64,000 bases of DNA from assembly GCF_001194135.2 (NCBI RefSeq), contig NC_068989.1:19552412-19616411 (forward strand), read 5' to 3'. The stretch comes from Octopus bimaculoides (lineage: Eukaryota). Positions 361 to 64,000 of this stretch are shown here, one piece after another. A model generated the notes under the pieces. The model was not told where the DNA came from. It saw nothing but the letters and a program-made list of their open reading frames with translations, and ran no database searches. Each line of letters begins with the position of its first letter. Positions within the stretch are counted from its first letter, which is position 1. Both the position numbers and the translations under genes were made by a program.

Positions 361-1572
361 TTGGGTCATCCTATAAATAATGCAGGTTTTTTATACTTTT
401 TTTACTTTTCAAAATTAAGATAGACTTGCAAGGCTCCTCTTCCAAAATTCACTTGTCTGTGACAAAAAATACTACTCCAGTACTGTTCTGACCTCGTCTA
501 CAGAATTAATATTTTTTCTAACCAAATGATTTTGAAGACTGCAGAATAAATGATAATCAAATGGGGCAATATCCGACGAATATGGTGGGTGGGGCATTGT
601 TTTCCATTCAAACTGCTCCAGCCTTTGGACTGTCATCCTCACTTGATGTGGTCGAGCATTATCCTGATGGAAGAACACCTTTTGTCTTAAAACCAAAGAT
701 GGTTGTTTTTCTTCTAGCACTGACTTAAGCTGCTCAAGCTGCTTACAGTAGATCTCCTTTGTTATCATTTGGTTTGGGTTTAAAAGTTCAAAGTGGAATA
801 AACCTTTCATACCCCACCAAACAGGTAACATCTTATGTGAATGAAGATCTCTTTTAGCCTGGGGTGCCAGTGTTTCTCCTTTCCCTACCTACTGTCTTTG
901 GCACTTGACATTTTTATAGAAAACCCATTTCTCATTACCAGTCACTATTCGGTTAAAAAAAGGTTCATTTGTGAGACGTGACAGTAAAGAAGAGCACACA
1001 TTCACTCTCTGCACATGATTAGACTCAAAAAGTTTATGAGGAACCCATTGACCCAATTTGCTGACTTTTCCGATGGCACACAGGTGTTGATGAATGTTTG
1101 AATGACCAAATCCAAGATTCTCTAGTACTTCCTCAACAGTTACGATGGGATCTTGTTTCACTAGGGTATACAGAACTTCCTTATCAAGATCTACAGATCT
1201 CCCAAGACGAGGCTCATCTTCTAGGCTGTAGTTTCTGGCTCGGAATTTCTGGAACCACCATTGATGCTGCCTTACGCTTATTGTCTGATATCCATATACT
1301 GCATTAATATTCCTTGCACTTTCCATTGCATTGTTGCCTTTATTGAACTCATAAAGCAAAATATGCTGAACATGCTTTGTCACTTCTATTATAGCTTTGA
1401 AAAAATAACTGTTAAAATCAAACTGCACTCTTCAAGACTTGCACTAAGAATAAAGACAAGGTAAAATTACTACATACTTTTATAGCAAGTTGATGCAAGT
1501 AGTTATCCCATTCCCCTCCGACTTTTAGCTCATGCAATTGAAAAAACTGCATTACTTATGGGAGCATTACTA
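361..1572 (-). mobile_element. Mariner (Tc1/mariner, DD34D) transposon relic with broken transposase
   Basis: ORF 889-1428 has mariner HTH/linker motifs (LEDEPRLGR, WVPHKL, IVTGNEKW; first catalytic D reads N). ORF 472-831 has HQDNARPH...YSSDIAPFDYHLF, with exactly 34 residues between the two Ds. Imperfect TIRs at about 361-390 and 1541-1572. Confidence 0.92.
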
Positions 1573-2899: not shown

Positions 2900-3243
2900 T
2901 TGTGAGCGTCACCTTCCTGGCACTTGTGCCGGTGGCACATGTAAAGACATTCAAGCGAGATTGTTGCCAGTGCCCCTGGACTGGCTCCTATGCAGGTGGC
3001 ACGTAAAATACACCATTTTGAGTTTGGCCGTTGCCAGTACCACCTGACTGGCCTTTGTGCCAGTGGCACGTAAAAGCACCCACTACACTCTTGGAGTGGT
3101 TGGCATTAGGAAGGGCATCCAGCTGTAGAAACTCTGCCAGATTAGAGCCTGGTGTAGCCATCTGGTTCACCAGTCCTCAGTCAAATTGTCCAACCCATGC
3201 TAGCATGGAAAGCGGACGTTAAACGATGATGATGATGATGATG
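2900..3243 (+). mobile_element. RTE-tail-type SINE/LINE 3' end
   Basis: Contains TTAGGAAGGGCATCCAGCTGTAGAAAC...ACCCATGCTAGCATGGAAAGCGGACGTTAAACG and ends in a (GAT)n tail. More than 15 related copies occur in the window. Confidence 0.85.
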
Positions 3244-3469
3244 AAAAGGCATCTTACTGGGAAAAACCCTGTAAATATGACTGTCAATTCAATGAAAAAA
3301 CCCTAATTGGAAATGCAGGACAAACACTATCATGTTAATAGTGTGTAGTAATCAAGTGGAAACATCTAGCCATGGGTAAAAACCTTTCATGACATCAAAC
3401 AGTTGCACAAACTCTTTTCCTTTCATGTATAGGAAACAGACATCAAGCAAATGACCCATCAATGCTGGT

Positions 3470-9370: not shown

Positions 9371-11805
9371 TATATGGGAGAATTTATGAAAAAAACAACA
9401 ACAGACGAGGACAGGTGGTGTAAACAACAAAAGGATGTGTTAGTTTAACGCTCTGGAACAGAGAAAGTTTTTAACGTTTTGAAAGAATACGGAGAAGAAC
9501 AAGGAGAAAAACACAGAGAAAAAAAATTTGAATGTTGTTGTATCATGGCGACTGCCGGACAGAAAGTTCACGCAGGAGAGCTATATATAGGTAATGAAAA
9601 ATTATAGAAGTGAACTCTTTTCAAGAAACAACAGTGTAGGGCTTAATTTATTGAGCGATTAGATTAATGTATTAATTTGAAAGAGACAAGTTCCAAAGTC
9701 AATAATACTCCTCATCAAAGCTTACACATATCTAAACACAGAGGGTGTATATAAGCCATTATAAGCATGCAAACATATAACATACAAAACCATATATATA
9801 CATATAATAGTGTAATTCCGTGCCCAAATCAAAGTTGGATAAGTAATTGCATAAATACATACAGATAAATTAAGAAGTCCAAGCTGATGAAATAACAGTT
9901 CACAATAATTCAAAAGGGAGTCCTTAAATGAATCTAATAAATAGAAAGAATCTTACGACCATTTCCAGGAATGTGCCAAGAAAAATGTAGGTAAAACTTT
10001 TTGGACTTCAGTAATCCATATTTCCTTCATCAGAGAATATGTACGGATTTGGAATTTTTAAACAAAATCAGATATATTATCTGTAGAGTGGTTGGTGTTA
10101 AGATAATAGGAAGGGCATCCAGCTGTAGAAATCATGCCAAAGCAGACATTTAGAGCACAATGTAGTCATTGGACCAGTCAGATCCTATCAAGTTGTCCGA
10201 CCCATACCAGCATGGAACATAGATATTAAATGATGATGAAGATGGTGTGTGTGTGTGTTTATCCAATCTACGGACATTGTTGTTGTTGTTTATTCCAAAG
10301 TTGGCTCTCATATAGCAGATCTATGGTTAAAGGTATTCCACTTGTGACCATCAATACTGTCCAATATGCTCTTCCTTTATTTACAATGACAAGGAGTGAT
10401 ATGAAGGAGATTTGGCTACTATTTCTAGCAGGCTGGTTGTGAGGGGCACAAACAAAAAGACACACACACACACAGTTTCTGTCTACCAAATTCACTCACA
10501 GCCCAGAGTTATAGAAAACACTTACCCAAAGTACCTTGCAGTGGGACTGAACCCAAAACTACATGGTTGCAAAGTGAGCTACTTAACTACAACAGTCATG
10601 CCTGCAACTTGTACAAAAAAAATCTCAACAATTTTGTATTTAAGAATGCACCATTGTCATTATCAATGCAATAATCAGGACAAGCTAATGAGTGAACCTC
10701 TACATGAAGGTTAGGAAAAGTTCACTTGCAGGCACAATTTTACTTGTGATAAAATCTGAAAGTGTTTTCTGACAAGATCTCTAAAAACCTATGTAAAAAA
10801 ACAAAACATTTTTGATACAAATACCAAAACAGTAATTTAAGATGTTGTTTACCTATGAATCTTAAATTTAAATATAGCTTCTCAGCACAGATTCAGTCCA
10901 TCTAGGTTCTTATGTACTTCCAATTTATCTCTGAAACAGTAGCCAAATTTCCCTCAAAATTTACCTGATTATCATTTTATTAACCTTTGCTGCAACTGAC
11001 TTCTTTGGCTTATGAGTTTATGGCGATGTTTACGTTTAGCATCCTAAATTTATTTACAGTGCAGGCTTGGTTGTGTGGTTAAGAAACTGACTTTGCAACC
11101 ATGTGGTTTTGGATTCAGTCGCATGGCACAGCATCTTAGGCGAGTGTCTTCTACTAGAGCTCCTGACCAACTAATGTCTTGAGAGTGAATTTGGTTGATG
11201 GAAACTGTATGGAAACCTGTCATATCTACCTATTTATCTATCTATTTATGTCTGTCTGTCCCTTGCTGTCAATGAGCATAAGCCCGAAGCATCGAAGATT
11301 TTTCCATTCTTCCTAAGTGTTAAACTAATTCACCAGCTTGTTGTTCCTTCACCTGAGAAATCACACACACACAAACACATCAGCATCAGATCATATATAT
11401 TTCATTTTTCATTTTATCTAGTTTCAGCTCATGAGCTGTGGCCATATATAAGTATTTACATATATTTTTATATATAATTTTTTTTGATAGTTGCTCCAGT
11501 TTAAATTCCTTTTTGCAAACTTCTTTTAATTCTTCATAATGGAATGAGATATGTAATATTAAATTTAGAAAGTTGAAATAGTTTCCAGGCACTTTAAAAC
11601 AACACAAAGATTTTGAAACAATCTTGATACAGTAAACAAAATGATCATATCAGATTCTATAAGCGCTTTACGGAAGGAAGAACCTCAGATTGCATTTAAC
11701 ACCAAAATCAAAAATACCTTTTGTAAGTTTCCAGAAAGACAGTCAGAAAATTTCACCATTAAATACACACAGTGAATGCAATAAAAATGACAGAAATAGG
11801 CTTAC

Positions 11806-11866
11806 CTTGTATGAACTACAAAAGTAAGGAATGCGTATATTCCAGGATCAATTGATTTTGCCTTCT
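11806..11866 (-). CDS. Candidate 61-nt coding exon, copy 1 (KAKSIDPGIYAFLTFVVHT), unidentified protein
   Basis: Acceptor tatgtttttcatag| and donor aag|gtaagc. Only one frame is open. Four of the six codon differences versus copy 2 are synonymous in this frame. Confidence 0.55.
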
Positions 11867-12225
11867 CTATGAAAAACATACTTAAGCTCATCAGTCAGAC
11901 TTAACACTACAACATCTATTTCTGAAATATTCATCACATTACACCGTGTGCGTTCTTACATTTGTATGCCCCCATGACATTCAGAGCATACATAATGTGA
12001 GACAGGACAGTTTAAAGTTAAATAGGTAACATTACCATTAATAATAATAATAATAATAATAATAAAGTGGCTAGGAAGTTTACACCTTTATAGTTAAAAT
12101 ATAAATAAAAATTCAGTAGGATATTAAAATACCACTTGCTATAGATAGAGCTATCACTCTAAAACCACAAACTACTATTAAAATACACACGGTGAATGCA
12201 ATAAACATAACAGAAATAGGCTCAC

Positions 12226-12280
12226 CTTGTATGAACTACAGAAGTAAGGAATGCATAGATTCCGGGATCAATTGATTTTA
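12226..12280 (-). CDS. Candidate duplicated exon, copy 2 (KSIDPGIYAFLTSVVHT)
   Basis: Donor aag|gtgagc. The homologous acceptor AG is mutated to AC (12288-12287), but a new AG 6 nt downstream (12282-12281) keeps the same phase. Confidence 0.4.
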
Positions 12281-13129
12281 CTTTCAGTATGAAAAATACA
12301 CATAAGCTTGTCAGCCAGACTTAACACTAAAACATCTATTTCTGAAATATTCATCACATTACACAGTAATAATGGTAATGATACCTATTTAGCTTCAAAA
12401 TTATATATATACATATATACATACATATATATATATAAACAACCATGGGTGTATATAAACTTACATTAATTTTTTTTTTAGAAGTGTTGAATGTGTATTG
12501 TACGATATAGACAAAAAAGTGATATTTCAAACACAGCATCACCATTAAAACACCAGAAATATTGGGTATTACTTTTACAATGTGGAAGAAGTTGTCAACA
12601 AACAGCTATATACATATACATGTATAGTTATTTGTGAGGGATTATCAATCTGGGCAAAATACTTCTTAAGCTCTCTGTTAGTACACCAGACTAACAATAT
12701 TGTTTAGATTAGTAAAGAAATCTAAGTATTCTTGTGGCAGGGTCCGAGGTTATAGTTCATCACCATTCTATATTGCAAATCCATGATTGTGCTCCAGTTA
12801 TACTGGATTTTAAACAGAGATATATAAATAAATAATGATCACTACATATTCTTCCTTCATTGGAGTAAATTTAGCTTACAGCTGTTTCCAGTAATTATTA
12901 CAGGTTCATTACTGATAAGCATAACCAGAAATGGCTCTGACAAAAGTAGCATTAATTTTTCAGGTTGTTCGACTTTTCTCAACTGATCAATAGACTAGTT
13001 GAGTAAACTTATCGGTAGTGGACCTATAAATACTGAAAACAACTGTAAACCAAATTTACTCCAATAAAGGAAAAATATATGACCATTATTTATACCTTGT
13101 GTCATATATATATATATATATAGGAAATG

Positions 13130-13640
13130 TGCTGTGCGTGAGAAGACCCGGCAAGCCAAGTGAGATCGTTGCCAGGGCCCCTGGACTGGCTCTTGTGCGG
13201 GTGGCACATAAGATGTACCATCTTGAGCGTGACCGTTGCCAGTACCGCCTGACTGGCCTTGTAGGGTTTTCGAGCGAGATTGTTGCCAGTGCCCCTGGAC
13301 TGGCTCTTGTGCGGATGGCACATAAAAGACATCATTTCGAGCGTGGCCGTTTTCATGCAGGTGACACGTAAAAGCACCCACTACACTCTCTGAGTGGTTG
13401 GCGTTAGGAAGGGCATCCAGCTGTAGAAACTCTGCCAAATTAGATTGGAGCCTGGTGTTGCCATCCGGTTTCACCAGTCCTCAGTCAAATCGTCCAACCC
13501 ATGCTAGCATGGAANNNNNNNNNNNNNNNNNNNNNNNNNNNNNNNNNNNNNNNNNNNNNNNNNNNNNNNNNNNNNNNNNNNNNNNNNNNNNNNNNNNNNN
13601 NNATGGAAAGCGGACGTTAAACGATGATGATGATGATATA
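13130..13640 (+). mobile_element. RTE-tail-type SINE with internal tandem subunits, interrupted by an N gap
   Basis: Repeated gttgccag(t/g)gcccctggactggctcttgtgcgg subunits and a (GAT)n tail. Confidence 0.85.
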
Positions 13641-13940: not shown

Positions 13941-14342
13941 TCGGACTTTCAGTTTCTGTCACCCAAATCCACTTAGAAGGCTGTGTGGGGGCTAAAGTAG
14001 AAGACATTTGCCCAAAGTGCCATGCAGTGGGGCTGAACCTGGAACCATGTGATTGCAAAGCAAAGGTCCTTACTACACAAGCCACAGATGTACCACTATT
14101 TCAGAAAACTGTTCCTAAATAGTTTGTATGTCTATGTATAACTTCCACTTAAATTCATTATGTTTTCTATTAACTGTAGCAATGTGGTGTAAAGATAATA
14201 AACAATATCAAAGCATTTGTGCAGATAACAGTGGAGATAAAAAAAATCAAAATGGAATATTTAACTTTAATAAATTTAACCCTTCACTTTTTGCTTTACA
14301 TTGAAGATAAATACACTTGATAAGAAAGAAAAAAAAATCCTT

Positions 14343-14611
14343 CATCATCATCATCGTTTAACGTCCGCTTTCCATGCTAGCATGGGTTGGACGATTTGAC
14401 TGAGGACTGGTGCAACCGGATGGCTACACCAGGCTCCAATCTAAATTGGCAGAGTTTCTACAGCTGGATGCCCTTCCTAACGCCAACCACTCAGAGAGTG
14501 TAGTGGGTGCTTTTACGTGTCACCCGCACAAAAACGGCCACGCTCGAAATGGTGTCTTTTATGTGCCACCCGCACAAGAGCCAGTCCAGGGGCACTGGCA
14601 ACGATCTCGCT
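14343..14611 (-). mobile_element. RTE-tail-type SINE, inverted relative to the 13130-13640 copy
   Basis: The reverse complement matches about 13277-13514 with few substitutions. Confidence 0.9.
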
Positions 14612-17028
14612 CCACAAATAAAATATATCAACAACATAACTAATCTTCTGATATATCCTTCATGTAAATACAATTCAAAATATTAAGCTTTAGCTGGATT
14701 GGAACTTTCATAATATGCTTTACATTAAACCATGGAGTGGAGATAGGCACAAAATGCAGGGCATATTCTGATCATAACTGCATCAACTACTTCTTTTTAA
14801 TGTTCCAGTAGGAGCTCAGAAAATGTAAAGAAATGTTTATTATAACAACAATATATTCTATCTTTTACTTGTTTCAGCCATTGAACTGTGTACTGCCTCG
14901 AAGGGTTTCAGTTACAAATTGACTCCAGTACTTATTTTTTAATGTCTGGTACTTAGTCTATTGGATGCTTGCCAAACATCTATGTTACATGGATGACAAC
15001 AAACCAACACCAGTTGTCATGCAGTGGGAATGGGGATCAGATGCAAACACATACACATGCACATCATAATTGTGGCTGATGCTGGTGTTTTGTAACTGGC
15101 ACCCATGCCAGTGGCATGTAAAAAGCACCCACTACACTCTTGGAGTAGTTGGCAATAGGAAGGGCATGCAGCTGTAGAAACTCTGCCAGATCAGATTGGA
15201 ACCTGGTGCAGCTCCCCAGCTTGCTGGTTTTCAGTCAAACCGTCCAACCCATGCCAGCATGGAAAACGGACGTTAGACTGACTTCTCTCAGTTTCCATAT
15301 ACCAAATCCTCTCACAAGGCTTTGGTCTGTCTCGAGCTATAGTAGAACTGCCCAAGGTGTCGTGTAGTGGAACTGAACCTGTAAACATGTGGTTGGCAAG
15401 CAAACTTCTTACCACACACCCATGCCTAGAAAAAGATTTTACTGGATATCTCTTCTACAGATATAAACCTGATTCATGTTGGAAGATACATAGCTTGAAT
15501 TAAACCTAAATATGAAAAAAAAACAAAACAAAAAACCCTCTGTTATCATTTGAACGTATAACACATAAGTACACTTCACTAGCACATCTGCTACTCAAAA
15601 CCCGCATCGTATCCTCCGATTGTATAGAGTTGTCGCTTGATCATGTGGCACTCTGTACTTAGTTTCAAATAACAAGTTAACATCATTGATTTCTTTAACT
15701 TCTGCCGCAAGTACTCAAGTCTAACACCTCCAACACTGCCAACCCTACTACATCATGCTAATACTCGTAATTTAGTAATTTAGCGACACCACCACGTAGA
15801 AAGAAGGTGCAGAATCGTGAAGAGAATTTGGAAAGCCACAGAGATTTAATTTAATGACAATCACGATTTAGTTTTTCCGTGGTTAGAGTAACGTTATATT
15901 TACATTAATCTATTATTAAGTAAACGTATCCAGTCCTCTATCTATCTATCTATCTACCAGATCGATGAGATTATTGTTCGGCTAATTGCTGCTGCAGGTA
16001 GTTTGCATGCTTGCACGTGGTTGGAACTGTTTAAAATGATGACCAGTTCTAAGTCAGTTTCAGGTGTTGTTTGGACTGACGTTGAATAACTACAATATCT
16101 GGTTAAAATATCTGTCTCAAGTTTTTAGCTTTAACGGTGTGGACTCACGTATTTTTTAATAAACACGAACAATTTAGCGGATATTTTCATTAACGATTTC
16201 TTTCAAAACTGAAAATTCTCATACAATAGGTCATTCTCAAAAAGATTTTTGTTAAATGTCACCGATTAGATTACGTGATTTTAAAAAAATGGAATAGTCC
16301 CAATATGGAATAAACTTCCAGAACATCTGTTAATGACAATTTAACCATTTTCCATAAGGATTTAAGTAACACAAATTTTTTGAAAGGTGGGGATCGGTGC
16401 TAAGATGTTGGATATGCTTTTCCTTTTGATGTTTTAATGTATATACACATATTGCAATCATAATGGTCACATTAAAAACAATGCAAATTTTTGGCTCCAG
16501 TTTTTTTGTATCATTTATATGTGAAAGGTTTTGTTATTTGTTTGGAATTTTCTTTCTTGTAATTTTTTTAATAAATTATGTAACAGTATTAAACGTAAAT
16601 ATTAAAATAAAATTCATTCAAAACTAAAAAAAAAAAAAATAATAGTGTGTGTACATGTGTGTATGTATTTGTTTACGCCAATGATGAACTTTCTATAAAC
16701 AGAGAGAGAGAGAAAGAAAGAGAGAGAGAGAGAGAGAAATAGTGTGTGTGTGTGAAGGAGAGAAAGAGGAGAAAGAAAAATCAGACGGAAAGAAATAAAG
16801 TAAAGCAAGAGGGTGGTGAGTAAAAGAGAGGGGGAGAAAATCATCGCTTCATACCAATACGGTCATGTTTACAATATAACGAAGAAAAAAAACTATAATA
16901 ATAAAAGGAAAGTAAATAAATAGAGGCGAGTCGGAGTAATGTCAACATTGGTTTTTTTCATAGATTTTAAAGCAAAAAAATAATAATAATAGCAAAAAAG
17001 TTAATGAAATAAGATAAATTATTCTTAC

Positions 17029-17499
17029 TGATATGATGTGCGGACAAGCCATGCAATCGGGCTTTAAAATTGCCAATGTCAGTTGGAGTTTGTTGGCAAC
17101 CACGTGCATTTTGGTAGCACGTTGGAGCCACCATACAAACGATGAAATAACCTGAAGACTTGAAGAGTTCCTCCTTTTCTGAAGTGACAATAATATTTAT
17201 AATTAGCTCCCTTGCAAGTCAAACCCAAAACATTTGTTGTCAAATTATAAATAAAACGAAGTTAGGAATTGGTGAAATACTGTTTGTTCCTTTTACAGCT
17301 CGAGCTGTAAAAGACGACGTCTGCTTATCTCCAGGTCTGTTTTAACTATGCCACGAGTTAGGTTGTTGATTGTAGTGAGATACTGCCACAGAGGAATAAA
17401 TACAAGATCTTCACAGCAGACGATTACTAAACTGAACAAGAGAAGACCTTGGAATATCACGTACAAGAAAGAGATAAATAATAAAAATTCTTTCAACAC
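17029..17499 (-). other. Candidate 471-nt exon (5' UTR plus possible start MVAPTCYQNARGCQQTPTDIGNFKARLHGLSAHHI)
   Basis: Acceptor ttttgttttttttag| and donor ca|gtaaga, in unique, relatively CpG-rich sequence. The ATG frame ends in phase 1, compatible with the 11866 exon. Confidence 0.3.
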
Positions 17500-53138: not shown

Positions 53139-53345
53139 TCAACCATCATCAGCTCCAAACGTCCATCCATGACCCCTTAGGTGGCTTTTAAGTCCAGCAT
53201 TAGATTTGCAGGGTCTGCAGCAAACGTGACAGACAAAAGATGAGCCCTCTATTGGATTTATAGGGTCAGCTTGTGGGATGCCATCATTATGTACTTTCAT
53301 ATGCCTTTTAAGACAAGATATTGATTTGCAGATCTTTTTGCACAC
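53139..53345 (-). mobile_element. Two C2H2 zinc fingers, probably the C-terminus of a LINE ORF2
   Basis: CKKICKSISCLKRHMKVH and CHVCCRPCKSNAGLKSHLRGH. There is no TGEKP linker and no splice acceptor, and the 5' side abuts microsatellite. Confidence 0.5.
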
Positions 53346-53371
53346 CACACATGCATGCATGCAGGCATGCA

Positions 53372-53475
<104 letters not shown>

Positions 53476-56154
53476 CTCTTTTACTCTTTAACTTGTTTCA
53501 GTCATTTGACTGCAGCCATGCTGGAGCACCGCCTTTAGTCGAGCAAATAGACCCCAGGACTTATTCTTTGTAAGCCTAGNNNNNNNNNNNNNNNNNNNNN
53601 NNNNNNNNNNNNNNNNNNNNNNNNNNNNNNNNNNNNNNNNNNNNNNNNNNNNNNNNNNNNNNNNNNNNNNNNNNNNNNNNNNNNNNNNNNNNNNNNNNNN
53701 NNNNNNNNNNNNNNNNNNNNNNNNNNNNNNNNNNNNNNNNNNNNNNNNNNNNNNNNNNNNNNNNNNNNNNNNNNNNNNNNNNNNNNNNNNNNNNNNNNNN
53801 NNNNNNNNNNNNNNNNNNNNNNNNNNNNNNNNNNNNNNNNNNNNNNNNNNNNNNNNNNNNNNNNNNNNNNNNNNNNNNNNNNNNNNNNNNNNNNNNNNNN
53901 NNNNNNNNNNNNNNNNNNNNNNNNNNNNNNNNNNNNNNNNNNNNNNNNNNNNNNNNNNNNNNNNNNNNNNNNNNNNNNNNNNNNNNNNNNNNNNNNNNNN
54001 NNNNNNNNNNNNNNNNNNNNNNNNNNNATACATATATACAATGGGTTTCTTTCAGTTTCCGTCTACCAAATCCACTCACAAGGCTTTGGTCGGCCCGAGG
54101 CTATAGTAGAAGACACTTGCCCAAGGTGCCACGCAGTATATAAAATATACACACACACAATTGAGCTTCACACAGCTTCTGTTTAATAAAATCCTTTCAT
54201 AAGTCATTATATGTTGATGATGATGATGATGACAATGACAATGATGATGATAATTATGATGATTGCATACATCTCATCTCAAGGGCATACATATGTATGT
54301 CTGAGTGTGTATTTGTCTGTATGCGTGCGAATGCATATAGGATAAAATGTTATAATGGGTACACCCAATGCTGTTGTTTAACTCTGAGTTACATAGTGTT
54401 AAGTAGATGCGAGATGAAAACAGGATGTCAGAATGTCACAGGTAACATTTCTGGAAGATCTGCTACATATGCCACGCAATGAGGTATGTACAATGAAGTT
54501 CAGGACATATATACACACTGATATATACATATGTATGTATGTATGTATGTATATGCATGTACACACACATACACACATGTAGAAAAGAGCATACGCAAAT
54601 GCACAAACTTTAAAAAACGTATATATTCAGAAACATACAATTGACAACACATATCCACATACATACACACATACAAATGAGAGCACACATACTCAGAAAG
54701 ATACACACACATATACACATATCCTCATCCAATACACACACACACACACACACACACTCACACACCAACACAGAAAAAAAAAAAAAAAAAAAAAAAATTA
54801 AAAACATACACACACCCACATGCAAATGCACATGTACAAATACACACACACAAACACACATGAGAACACTCACCCACACACTGATGAAAAGACACACATA
54901 CTGAAACAGAGATACTCAGCCACTCTAACAGTTATGTCTCTATACACATACATACACATTTCAGCCACGCACATGCAAGTTGTCTACTCCAATCTGAAAA
55001 CTCTATCTAGGAGTTAACCTTTCACTCTAACTAGTACTTGAGTTCAGATATAGTGTCCTTATCTGATATAAGTCAAATATGTGGTGGTGGGGGTGATGGA
55101 GAGGATGGTGGCAGCAATGGGGTTATCTGCATGGTCATGTGATATATGGTATCCCTAATGTACTGCAAGTTAAGTCACTGGGGCTATATTGCTTTATAAT
55201 AGTGCTTCTCATAGAATGATGCAGGCCTTCCCGGTGTGGTGCTTTGAGAACTGAAAAAGAGGTCAACAAATATCTATGTTTAATGAAATTAAGATGGTTT
55301 TGAAACTTTTATAACTTGTCCAACATAACAGTGACAGAAGATGAATTATATGGATACAAACTCTATTTTGTTTTCTCATTGGTAAAGCGGAGGTGAGCTG
55401 GCAGAATTGTTAGCACTCTAGACCAAATGCTGGACCAGTGGCATTTCATTTGTCTGTCTGTTTTGAGTTCAAATTCTGCCAAGGTCAACTTTACCTCTCA
55501 TCCTTTTGGAATTGATAAATAAGTACCAGTTGAGCACTGGTATCGATATAATCAACTAACTCCTTTCTCTAAAATTTCAGGTCTTGTGCTTATAGTAAAA
55601 AAGAATTATTAAAGAGGAAAGGTGAGGATGGGTGAAAATCTCCACAATATTTTTGTGGTAGTGCATGTGGGGGTACTGACATTGGTCAATTATGGGGTCT
55701 AGAGCTTTTCTGCCATCCATCATCTACTCCAATAACTGTAATTCCTGAAAGTGAACAAGACTTCAAAATTAGAGAGACAAAGCGTTGTCCATTTAACCAA
55801 TCCCAATTCCTGTGTAGTATTTGTTTTATCAACTCTGGAATGGTCGAAGTAGCAAGGGACCTCTTCATGGTTAGTCAAGCTTGCTATAAAATACCAACCA
55901 AATATCCCCAATTCAAATTAGTTAATGTGGTCCCAAATTCTCTGTATATAGGAAGTAGACATGTATACAGAAATTGTCATGGCTGGAATGTCTTTGATCA
56001 TAGGTTTGTAAGAAGAGGGCTTACCTGGGCTAAAGAAAAACAGTTCTGGAAGGATCAAATCAAAGGTAAACCTACTTTGATGGGATTTGAGCTCAGAATA
56101 TAACGGGTAATAACTAAATATAAATCAGTTGAGCCTGATACTCCACCATTTCTC

Positions 56155-62920: not shown

Positions 62921-63334
62921 TACTCTTTTACTCTTTTACTTGTTTCAGTCATATGACTGCGGTCATGCTGGAGCACCACCTTTAGTTGAGCAAATCGACC
63001 CCAGGACTTATTTTTTGGAAGCCTAGTACTTATTCTATCGGTCTCTTTTGCCGAACCGCTAAGTTACGGGTGACGTAAACACACCACCATCGGTTGTCAA
63101 GTGATGTTGCGGGGACAAGCAGACACACAAACATATACACACACATACATATATATATATATACATATATACGACAGGCTTCTTTCAGTTTCCGTCTACC
63201 AAATCCACTCACAAGGCTTTGGTCGGCTCGAGGCTATAGTAGAAGACACTTGCCCAAGGTGCCACGCAGTGGGACTGAACCCGGAACCATGTGGTTGGTA
63301 AGCAAGCTACTTACCACACAGCCACTCCTGCACC
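62921..63334 (-). mobile_element. Full-length young tRNA-headed SINE (Nin-domain-like)
   Basis: Head GGTGCAGGAGTGGCTGTGTGGTAAG...GGTTCCGGGTTCAGTCCC, central (TA/CA)n and tail (AAAAGAGT)n. More than 15 related copies occur in the window. Confidence 0.9.
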
Positions 63335-63700
63335 TATGTTTATTATGTGTAATCCATGGACATCAGGGAAATATGTCCTGTGCATCATATGTGATAAACA
63401 GATCAGGTAGAAGAGTTTAAAATTACGAGTGCATTTCATATAAAAAATTTAAAATTACAACCAAGCTTTGCATGAAATGTCATAACAAAAGAAACCAAAC
63501 AACACCAAAGTGTTTCTAGGTTAAGATTTTCCACAAAATTCATACAGAAAACTATTGCTTACGTTATTTAATTAAGTATACTGATGTGTAACAAAATTAG
63601 CGCAGGCTACTAACCCCAAGATTCCAAATTCAATTCCATATAACAAACTATATAATCAAAATAAAGCTGATAAAAAAATCAAGTATTCATTGTTTATATA

Positions 63701-63870
63701 GGCGCAGGAGTGGCTGTGTGGTAAGTAGCTTGCTTACCAGCCACATGGTTCCGGGTTCATTCCCACTGCGTGGCACCTTGGGCAAGTGTCTTCTACTATA
63801 GCCTCGGGCCGACCAAAGCCTTGTGAGTGGATTTGGTAGACGGAAACTGAAAGAAGCCTGTCGTATATAT
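63701..63870 (+). mobile_element. 5' half of the same SINE family
   Basis: GGCGCAGGAGTGGCTGTGTGGTAAG...GAAAGAAGCCTGTCG, then (TA)n. Confidence 0.9.
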
Positions 63871-64000
63871 GTATACATATATATATATATATATATAATA
63901 ATATTATTAGGGACAAAATCCAAAATTACAGGTAAAAAACTCAATTAAAATCAATTTATAAAAAATTAAAATTAAATTGAGCCTTATAGATAAAGTATAT

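What the first reader, a model, noticed from the sequence alone, without database searches (positions are those of the whole stretch)
11757..12364. Tandemly duplicated exon cassette with signs of mutually exclusive splicing
Seen: two ~188-bp copies 420 bp apart, each ending in a strong donor (AAG|GTAAGC and AAG|GTGAGC). Four of six codon changes are synonymous in the only open frame. Copy 2 lost its acceptor (AG to AC) but has an in-phase AG 6 nt later. The lengths, 61 and 55 nt, are both 3n+1, so including both would frameshift. Inference: a mutually exclusive exon pair (FLTFVV versus FLTSVV), or a duplicate that is decaying.
Basis: partly seen in the sequence, partly recalled or inferred. 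Interest (0 to 1): 0.7.

Follow-up and report, generated by a model that had tools for sequence, protein, structure and literature searches.

The report
Duplicated hairpin-bounded segment, exon unproven
A 187-base stretch of octopus DNA really is present twice, 420 bases apart, but I found no evidence that either copy is a used exon, and it looks more like an ordinary duplicated non-coding element bounded by inverted repeats than a pair of alternative exons.

Summary
Window 11761-11947 and 12181-12367 are 187-nt direct copies, 89% identical, and are the only two in the window.

The exon and mutually-exclusive-splicing reading is not supported:
- No host gene could be found.
- The 19-aa peptide matches nothing in a 5.8-billion-cluster protein collection that does hold Octopus sinensis RefSeq proteins. 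It also has no match in 1.84 billion representatives, Pfam or PDB.
- The "exon" is no better conserved between the copies than its flanks (7/61 against 13/126 differences, P=0.80).
- Its GC content equals the background.
- 73% of AG...GT intervals of this size in the window have an open frame.
- Copy 2's substitute acceptor is very weak (0.2 bits).
- The same phase and 3n+1 lengths follow largely from the duplication itself.

Each copy is bounded within 3-5 nt by a roughly 34-nt inverted repeat (P=0.001) and folds into a long hairpin. The 233-bp spacer has no counterpart after copy 2, so this is not a clean tandem unit.

Best reading, at confidence 0.6: a duplicated, inverted-repeat-bounded non-coding element (MITE-like or foldback) in AT-rich, repeat-rich DNA. 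RNA-seq junction reads and genome-wide copy counts would settle it.

The parts
11761..11947 (.). Repeat copy 1 (187 nt)
   Evidence: Direct repeat family D1, the reference copy. blastn and nhmmer find only this copy and copy 2.
12181..12367 (.). Repeat copy 2 (187 nt, 89% identical to copy 1, ungapped)
   Evidence: The 20 differences are listed.
11806..11866 (-). Exon-like stretch in copy 1: 61 nt, acceptor score 6.1 bits, donor AAG|GTAAGC 11.1 bits, one open frame giving KAKSIDPGIYAFLTFVVHT
   Evidence: No protein, Pfam or PDB match. Exon status is not shown.
12226..12286 (-). Homologous stretch in copy 2. AC replaces the acceptor AG, and the next AG would give a 55-nt unit at 12280..12226 with a 0.2-bit acceptor. 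Donor AAG|GTGAGC scores 11.7 bits.
11766..11799 (.). Left arm of the inverted repeat bounding copy 1 (CACACAGTGAATGCAATAAAAATGACAGAAATAG)
   Evidence: Local alignment with the reverse complement of 11916-11950 gives 26/35 matches with one gap. P=0.0013 against 3,000 shuffles, and 0.9% of real 210-nt windows score as well.
11916..11950 (.). Right arm of the inverted repeat bounding copy 1
   Evidence: As minus-strand RNA the two arms form a 35-bp stem (29 Watson-Crick and 6 G-U pairs) at -57.7 kcal/mol, z -3.6.
12189..12219 (.). Left arm of the inverted repeat bounding copy 2
   Evidence: score 30; P=0.013. The hairpin is -48.9 kcal/mol, z -3.4.
12336..12367 (.). Right arm of the inverted repeat bounding copy 2. 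It is cut short by about 3-8 nt where the B' sequence abuts it.
12011..12043 (.). B: 33-nt arm of a second inverted repeat, followed by a (TAA)9 microsatellite at 12039-12065
   Evidence: I4; 30/33 matches.
12367..12399 (.). B': the inverted partner of B, lying directly against the end of copy 2. B and B' enclose copy 2 in a 323-nt loop.
   Evidence: The fold of 12000-12410 (minus strand) is -104 kcal/mol, z -6.2, and its outermost stem is B'-B.

Best explanation
The two copies are a duplicated, non-coding element of about 185-190 bp, bounded by imperfect 34-nt inverted repeats (MITE-like or foldback). It lies in AT-rich, repeat-rich intronic or intergenic Octopus DNA.

Shown:
- The duplication is real.
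- Its ends lie within 3-5 nt of the outer ends of the inverted repeat.
- Each copy folds into a long hairpin.
- Copy 2 sits inside a second inverted-repeat pair (B/B').

Inferred:
- The second copy arose in one of two ways. It could be a nearby re-insertion of a small non-autonomous DNA element, with copy 2 nested next to B'. Or it could be a hairpin-provoked replication or repair error that copied exactly the palindromic unit.
- The two copies have since drifted apart neutrally, about 10.7% evenly along their length.
- The donor-like AAG|GTRAGC, the acceptor-like sites and the 19-codon open frame are features of the element that resemble an exon by coincidence. At most they are latent splice signals. 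Copy 2 in particular is not a competent exon.
For: - Only two copies, with sharp ungapped boundaries; the spacer is not duplicated.
- Homology runs 11761-11947 while the inverted repeat runs 11766-11950, so both ends coincide within 5 nt.
- The inverted repeat is significant: P=0.0013, and 0.9% of real windows score as well.
- Hairpin z-scores are -3.6 and -3.4.
- Other foldback units lie next door: B/B' with 30/33 matches, and 12830-12898 / 13026-13091 with 69-nt arms.
- 24% of the window has another copy within the window.
- Differences are spread evenly: exon 7/61, flanks 13/126, Fisher P=0.80. GC of the 'exon' is 34%, against 32% for the flanks and 35.5% for the window. The local GC of 27-33% is typical of non-coding sequence here.
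- No protein shares three 5-residue words with the peptide among 5.8 billion clusters, and that collection holds O. sinensis RefSeq proteins.
- No hit at E<=0.001 among 1.84 billion representatives, and none in Pfam or PDB.
- No other convincing exon or host gene within 17 kb on that strand.
- No Rfam family or tRNA.
Against: - By splice-signal strength copy 1 is one of only three exon-like candidates of that quality in the whole window, and the second best on the minus strand of 1-20 kb.
- Four of six codon changes are synonymous, nominal P=0.03 in a neutral simulation.
- No clear target-site duplication flanks either copy.
- No dispersed copies were seen, although only 85 kb of Octopus DNA could be searched.
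- Two insertions of a low-copy element 233 bp apart in the same orientation would be a coincidence unless the element hops locally.
- The protein negatives cannot exclude an unannotated, lineage-specific or non-coding exon, or one missing from a cluster representative.
Confidence: 0.6

Rival explanations
1. Copy 1 is a genuine cassette or constitutive exon, coding or non-coding, of an unannotated or poorly annotated gene on the minus strand. Copy 2 is a decaying pseudo-exon produced by a local duplication of the exon with parts of its introns.
For: - Strong donor, decent acceptor with a pyrimidine run, and a CTGAC branch-point-like motif about 32 nt upstream.
- It ranks among the top three exon-like candidates in the window.
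- Synonymous to non-synonymous changes are 4:2, P=0.03.
- Copy 2 lacks the AG, and its substitute AG is very weak.
- A possible first coding exon of an NME6-like gene lies 5 kb upstream on the same strand, so the region may be intronic and transcribed.
Against: - The peptide is absent from all protein collections searched, including one that holds O. sinensis RefSeq proteins.
- The exon is no more conserved than its flanks.
- There is no GC rise.
- Spliced directly to the NME6-like exon, which ends in phase 0, the 61-nt unit reads into a stop codon. I read this from the sequence.
- The NME6-like exon is itself unconfirmed.
- The coincidence between the unit's ends and the inverted repeat is left unexplained.
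Confidence: 0.2
2. The two copies are a functional mutually exclusive exon pair (FLTFVV against FLTSVV). Joint inclusion (61+55 nt) shifts the frame and is removed by nonsense-mediated decay.
For: - Homologous neighbouring units with the same frame, lengths differing by 6 nt, both 3n+1 and with no in-frame stop. These match the sequence-level candidate criteria of Hatje et al. 2017 (PMC5740500).
- Both donors are strong.
- Predicted hairpins could loop out one copy or the other.
Against: - The homologous acceptor in copy 2 is AC. The proposed AG scores 0.2 bits with A at -3, while a 7.2-bit acceptor 10 nt before the donor would compete with it.
- There is no sign of constraint on either copy relative to the flanks.
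- No gene, protein or transcript evidence was found.
- The criteria that are met are all inherited from the duplication.
- In humans only 1,399 of 6,541 sequence-based candidates, which were built from known protein-coding genes (annotated exons plus exons predicted in their introns), were verified by junction reads (PMC5740500).
Confidence: 0.05
3. The unit is transcribed as part of a long intron or non-coding RNA, and its hairpins matter as RNA. For example, they could be double-stranded substrates for A-to-I editing, or latent or poison exons whose inclusion ends the reading frame. It would not encode protein.
For: - The hairpins are clearly more stable on the minus strand (-57.7 and -48.9 kcal/mol, z about -3.5) than on the plus strand (-37.7 and -29, z -2.1 and -1.0), owing to 5-6 G-U pairs.
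- The B'-B stem encloses copy 2, z -6.2.
- Reading from a phase-0 upstream exon runs into a stop codon. I read this from the sequence.
Against: - The G-U against C-A asymmetry is 6:1, one-sided P about 0.06, so it is not significant.
- There is no Rfam match.
- Inverted repeats are common in this window.
- No transcript data are available.
Confidence: 0.1

Closest known systems
Mutually exclusive exon clusters born by tandem exon duplication, as catalogued in Hatje et al. 2017 (PMC5740500)
   Same: Two neighbouring homologous units share a frame. Their lengths differ by a multiple of three and are not themselves multiples of three. Both have GT donors and no in-frame stop.
   Different: No gene or transcript is known here. 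One unit lacks its acceptor. The 'exon' shows no excess conservation over the 'intron'. The duplicated unit is delimited by an inverted repeat, and the spacer is not part of a tandem unit.
Miniature inverted-repeat transposable elements (MITEs) and foldback elements. Their general properties are taken from established knowledge, not tested against a library.
   Same: Small size of about 185 bp, terminal inverted repeats of about 34 nt, no coding capacity of its own and AT-rich sequence. It is found next to or inside another inverted-repeat unit, and the copies end sharply at the repeat termini.
   Different: No target-site duplication could be recognised. The terminal repeats are only about 74% matched. 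Only two adjacent, same-orientation copies were seen, and genome-wide copy number is unknown.
Pseudo-exons, decoy exons and exonised repeats: intronic sequences with good splice-site matches that are not, or only rarely, spliced. This is established knowledge.
   Same: Strong donor and acceptable acceptor around a short open stretch in non-coding, repeat-derived sequence.
   Different: Whether it is ever spliced is unknown here. Known cases are defined by transcript evidence.

Membership tests
Mutually exclusive exon (MXE) pair | Both units are internal exons of a transcribed gene | tested here: inconclusive
   No host gene was identified. There is no Pfam, PDB or protein-collection match for the peptide or for other exon-like stretches on that strand. 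One unconfirmed NME6-like first exon lies at 17029-17109.
Mutually exclusive exon (MXE) pair | Sequence similarity between the neighbouring exons | tested here: met
   54/61 nt and 17/19 residues are identical.
Mutually exclusive exon (MXE) pair | Same reading frame, similar length (difference a multiple of 3), no in-frame stop | tested here: met
   61 against 55 nt, with the same frame open in both. This follows largely from the duplication, and 73% of such intervals have an open frame anyway.
Mutually exclusive exon (MXE) pair | Conserved, usable GT-AG splice sites on every member | tested here: not met
   Copy 2 has AC at the homologous acceptor, and the substitute AG scores 0.2 bits against 6.1 for copy 1. 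A competing 7.2-bit acceptor lies 10 nt before the donor. Scores come from a generic weight matrix, not one trained on Octopus.
Mutually exclusive exon (MXE) pair | Splice-junction reads from each exon to the flanking exons, and none joining the two except where that shifts the frame | not testable with these tools
   This criterion comes from PMC5740500.
MITE / foldback element | Terminal inverted repeats at the very ends of the repeated unit | tested here: met
   Arms are 11766-11799 and 11916-11950 (26/35 matches, P=0.0013), against homology limits of 11761 and 11947. The layout is the same in copy 2.
MITE / foldback element | Small size (under about 600 bp) and no coding capacity | tested here: met
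   About 185 bp. The longest open stretch is about 30 codons and has no homologue.
MITE / foldback element | Target-site duplication flanking each copy | tested here: inconclusive
   The flanks are caccattaaata|...|cgttcttacatt for copy 1 and attaaaatacac|...|aataatggtaat for copy 2. A TTA on both sides of copy 1 is possible only if the boundaries are shifted. No clear duplication is seen.
MITE / foldback element | Many dispersed copies in the genome | not testable with these tools
   Only two adjacent copies were found in the 64-kb window, and none in 21 kb of O. sinensis. No Octopus assembly is searchable here, and metagenome scans found nothing.

The most novel reading that the evidence does not exclude
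This could be a young, Octopus-lineage-specific pair of alternative exons in an unannotated gene, either mutually exclusive or one functional plus one poison exon. It would have been created when an exon flanked by complementary intron arms was copied as a unit. Competing RNA hairpins, each copy's own arms plus the B'-B stem around copy 2, would then decide which copy is exposed to the spliceosome.
Probability: 0.05. Interest if true: 0.5.

Novelty: already known. Interest (0 to 1): 0.15.

Why it matters
If the exon reading were true, this would be a very recent exon duplication caught at the point where it either becomes a regulated alternative pair or decays. It would come with built-in looping-out hairpins, which makes it a useful but not unprecedented example. 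On the evidence here it is an ordinary short duplicated repeat in non-coding DNA.

Its practical value is as a caution. A duplicated segment that happens to hold a good donor site will automatically show the same frame, the same phase and homologous peptides, so none of these can count as signs of mutually exclusive splicing.

Tried and rejected
1. Protein identification of the 'exon'.
- Padded with X, it shared no three 5-residue words with any protein.
- It had no Pfam hit and no PDB hit.
- An exhaustive phmmer of 12 concatenated exon-like peptides found nothing at E<=0.001.

2. Finding the host gene.
- Pfam on three-frame translations of 10.4-17.2 kb (minus strand) found nothing beyond one sub-threshold match, ATP-grasp_3 at E=0.094.
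- phmmer of all stop-free segments from 10.7-17.2 kb against PDB found nothing meaningful.
- A regex search for NDK motifs found none.
Searches did not confirm it.

3. Reaching other Octopus DNA or transcripts.
- Exact look-ups of four window ORFs found nothing on record.
- Two metagenome scans, with the exon DNA and with a back-translated peptide pattern, gave 0 hits.
- The contigs carrying the mariner homologues were one O. sinensis chromosome piece that is not orthologous, and JGI contigs that share only the mariner.

4. Known RNAs: no Rfam family reached its gathering score in the whole window. At E<=1 the local scan gave one chance-level mir-297 match in the microsatellite at 12402-12466. 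No tRNAs were found.

5. The idea of a clean 420-bp tandem unit was rejected.

6. The idea that the hairpin is selected as RNA because of G-U pairs: the asymmetry is 6:1 and not significant.
Full report
**1. The observation**

The window is AT-rich (35.5% GC), has seven N gaps and is full of repeats. 24% of it has another copy inside the window.

The repeat finder, MAFFT and blastn agree on the repeat. 11761-11947 and 12181-12367 are ungapped 187-nt direct copies, 167/187 identical, 420 bp apart start to start, E=3e-68. No further copy exists in the window. A profile search with nhmmer found none in the window or in 21 kb of Octopus sinensis DNA fetched later.

The exon-like reading is on the minus strand:
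- Copy 1 is ...tttttcatAG|AGAAGG...CATACAAG|GTAAGC, 11866..11806, 61 nt.
- In copy 2 the acceptor AG is AC. The next AG gives 12280..12226, 55 nt, followed by AAG|GTGAGC.
- The single open frame reads KAKSIDPGIYAFLTFVVHT(R) and KVKSIDPGIYAFLTSVVHT(R).
- Six codons differ, four synonymously.

**2. How much of it exceeds chance or exceeds the duplication itself**

*Splice signals.* With a generic metazoan weight matrix, the two donors are among the 12 best of 7,204 GT sites on both strands, and copy 1's acceptor is in the top 5.5%. Only three exon-like intervals in the window are as good as copy 1. One of the other two lies in a mariner relic. On the minus strand of 1-20 kb it is the second-best candidate. 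This is the real point in favour of an exon.

*Open frame.* This carries no weight, because 73% of AG...GT intervals of 55-67 nt in this window have at least one open frame.

*Shared features.* Equal phase, equal frame, homologous peptides and two good donors all follow from copying one segment. The only extra coincidence is that the next AG in copy 2 is in phase, which has a prior of one in three.

*Copy 2's acceptor.* That AG is poor: 0.2 bits, and 2,718 of 7,281 AG sites score at least as well. In both copies a better acceptor-like site (CCTTACTTYTGTAG|, 7.2 bits) lies 10 nt before the donor.

*Substitutions.* The 20 differences are evenly spread: 7/61 in the 'exon' against 13/126 in the flanks, Fisher P=0.80. 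13 of the 20 are transitions. The 4:2 ratio of synonymous to non-synonymous changes has a nominal P=0.03 under a neutral simulation. It comes from an excess of synonymous changes rather than a deficit of non-synonymous ones, and the frame and test were chosen after seeing the data.

*Composition.* GC of the 'exon' is 34%, against 32% for the flanks and 35.5% for the window. The surrounding 300-nt bins run 27-33%.

**3. Is there a gene?**

*The peptide.* Padded to the minimum query length, it shares no three 5-residue words with any of 5.8 billion protein clusters. That collection does contain Octopus sinensis RefSeq proteins. A control search with the Mos1-type mariner relic at 892-1431(-) returned 'SETMAR-like [Octopus sinensis]' from a 120-Mb chromosome. 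The 21-kb piece of that chromosome shares the window's SINE-like repeats at up to 85-90% identity, which supports an Octopus origin for the window. Pfam and PDB gave nothing for the peptide.

*Other exon-like stretches.* An exhaustive phmmer of twelve exon-like peptides from this strand, including both copies, against 1.84 billion representatives gave no hit at E<=0.001. Translated scans of 10.4-17.2 kb (Pfam) and 10.7-17.2 kb (PDB) found nothing beyond sub-threshold chance-level matches.

*One lead.* The stretch 17109..17029(-) reads ATG MHVVANKLQLTLAILKPDCMACPHIIS |GTAAGA. It was not confirmed by the word search, PDB or Pfam, and no other NDK motif is in the window. If it is real, the duplication lies in its first intron. 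Splicing that phase-0 exon to the 61-nt unit would run into a stop codon, which I read directly from the sequence.

*Limits of the negatives.* They cannot exclude an unannotated, lineage-specific or non-coding exon, or an alternative exon missing from a cluster representative.

**4. What the duplicated unit looks like**

It is not a head-to-tail tandem unit. The 233-bp spacer has no counterpart after copy 2, and TRF sees only microsatellites.

Each copy is bounded by an inverted repeat:
- In copy 1, 11766-11799 pairs with 11916-11950 (26/35 matches with a perfect 9-nt core). P=0.0013 against shuffles, and only 0.9% of real 210-nt windows do as well.
- In copy 2, 12189-12219 pairs with 12336-12367 (P=0.013).

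The homology between the copies (11761-11947) therefore ends within 5 and 3 nt of the outer ends of the inverted repeat. That is expected if the repeat-bounded unit itself was what got copied. It is not expected for an arbitrary exon-plus-flanks duplication.

As minus-strand RNA the units fold into long hairpins at -57.7 and -48.9 kcal/mol, z -3.6 and -3.4. The stem in copy 1 is 35 bp, and the whole 'exon' with both splice sites sits in the roughly 116-nt loop. The plus strand folds less well, but the G-U against C-A asymmetry of 6:1 is not significant.

Copy 2 is also enclosed by a second inverted pair: B at 12011-12043 and B' at 12367-12399, with 30/33 matches. B' abuts the end of copy 2 and replaces its last few terminal-repeat bases. 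The fold of 12000-12410(-) has z -6.2. A third foldback unit with 69-nt arms lies at 12830-13091.

No target-site duplication is evident. No Rfam family reaches its gathering score and no tRNA is present; the only low-threshold match is a chance-level mir-297 hit in the microsatellite at 12402-12466.

**5. Interpretation**

*Best reading (confidence about 0.6).* This is a duplicated non-coding element bounded by inverted repeats, MITE-like or foldback, in repeat-rich intronic or intergenic DNA. The second copy came either from a nearby re-insertion nested beside B' or from a hairpin-provoked replication or repair error. The copies have since diverged neutrally, and the splice-like signals are incidental. 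About 45% of the O. bimaculoides genome is repeats (PMC12988792), so this is the default expectation for such sequence.

*Rivals.*
- Copy 1 is a real exon and copy 2 a decaying pseudo-exon: about 0.2.
- The unit is a non-coding RNA or structural element: about 0.1.
- A true mutually exclusive pair: about 0.05.

*Against the criteria of Hatje et al. 2017* (PMC5740500):
- The sequence-level criteria are met: similarity, frame, length, and no in-frame stop.
- Conserved usable splice sites on both members are not met.
- The decisive junction-read criteria could not be tested.
- Even in humans only 1,399 of 6,541 sequence-based candidates were verified, although those were built from known protein-coding genes (annotated exons plus exons predicted in their introns).

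**6. Verdict**

The duplicate is real and copy 2 is not a competent exon, but the exon cassette and mutually exclusive splicing are not supported. This is an ordinary feature and interest is low. RNA-seq junction counts, and copy counts and orthologous loci in full octopod assemblies, would settle it.

Noticed in passing
window 472-1431 (-): A relic of a Mos1-type mariner transposase, broken by stop codons. Its ORFs match Pfam HTH_48 (E=4e-17) and Transposase_1 (E=2e-16). The closest proteins include 'SETMAR-like [Octopus sinensis]'. A second, more decayed mariner-like stretch lies at about 20.7-21.8 kb (+).
   Followed up: partly
window 17029-17109 (-): A possible first coding exon: ATG MHVVANKLQLTLAILKPDCMACPHIIS followed by GTAAGA. 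It was not confirmed by protein, PDB or Pfam searches, and no further NDK motifs are in the window.
   Followed up: partly
window 12830-12898 and 13026-13091: A foldback or MITE-like unit of about 262 bp with 69-nt inverted arms at about 87% identity, lying 450 bp from copy 2.
   Followed up: partly
window 63145-63337 and 63698-63890: A 193-nt inverted repeat, 97% complementary and 360 nt apart, made of SINE-like sequence. It looks like a very young inverted duplication or insertion pair.
   Followed up: no
window 53142-53480 (-): An open frame with two C2H2-type zinc-finger motifs (Pfam zf-met E=1.5e-5, zf-C2H2 E=0.018), embedded in microsatellite-rich sequence next to an N gap. It may be a fragment of one of the expanded octopus zinc-finger genes or of a repeat.
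   Followed up: partly
window 11815 and 12235 (-): In both copies an acceptor-like site (CCTTACTTYTGTAG|, 7.2 bits) lies 10 nt before the strong donor, outlining a 10-nt micro-exon-like unit TTCATACAAG. On the plus strand each copy also carries a donor-like RAA|GTAAGG (7.4 bits). So the repeat is rich in splice-like motifs on both strands.
   Followed up: partly
window 2950-3244, 13157-13514, 14337-14612, 14859-15428 and others: A SINE-like repeat family with up to 17 copies in the window, often flanked by (TA)n or (TATACA)n microsatellites. It shares up to 85-90% identity with O. sinensis chromosome CM016864.1 (locus L002).
   Followed up: partly
loci L001, L003, L004 (JGI metagenomes 3300002938 and 3300002931): Long metagenome contigs carry a mariner about 80% identical in DNA to the window's relic but none of the octopus SINEs. 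The same mariner lineage therefore sits in some other, unidentified eukaryotic host in those samples.
   Followed up: no
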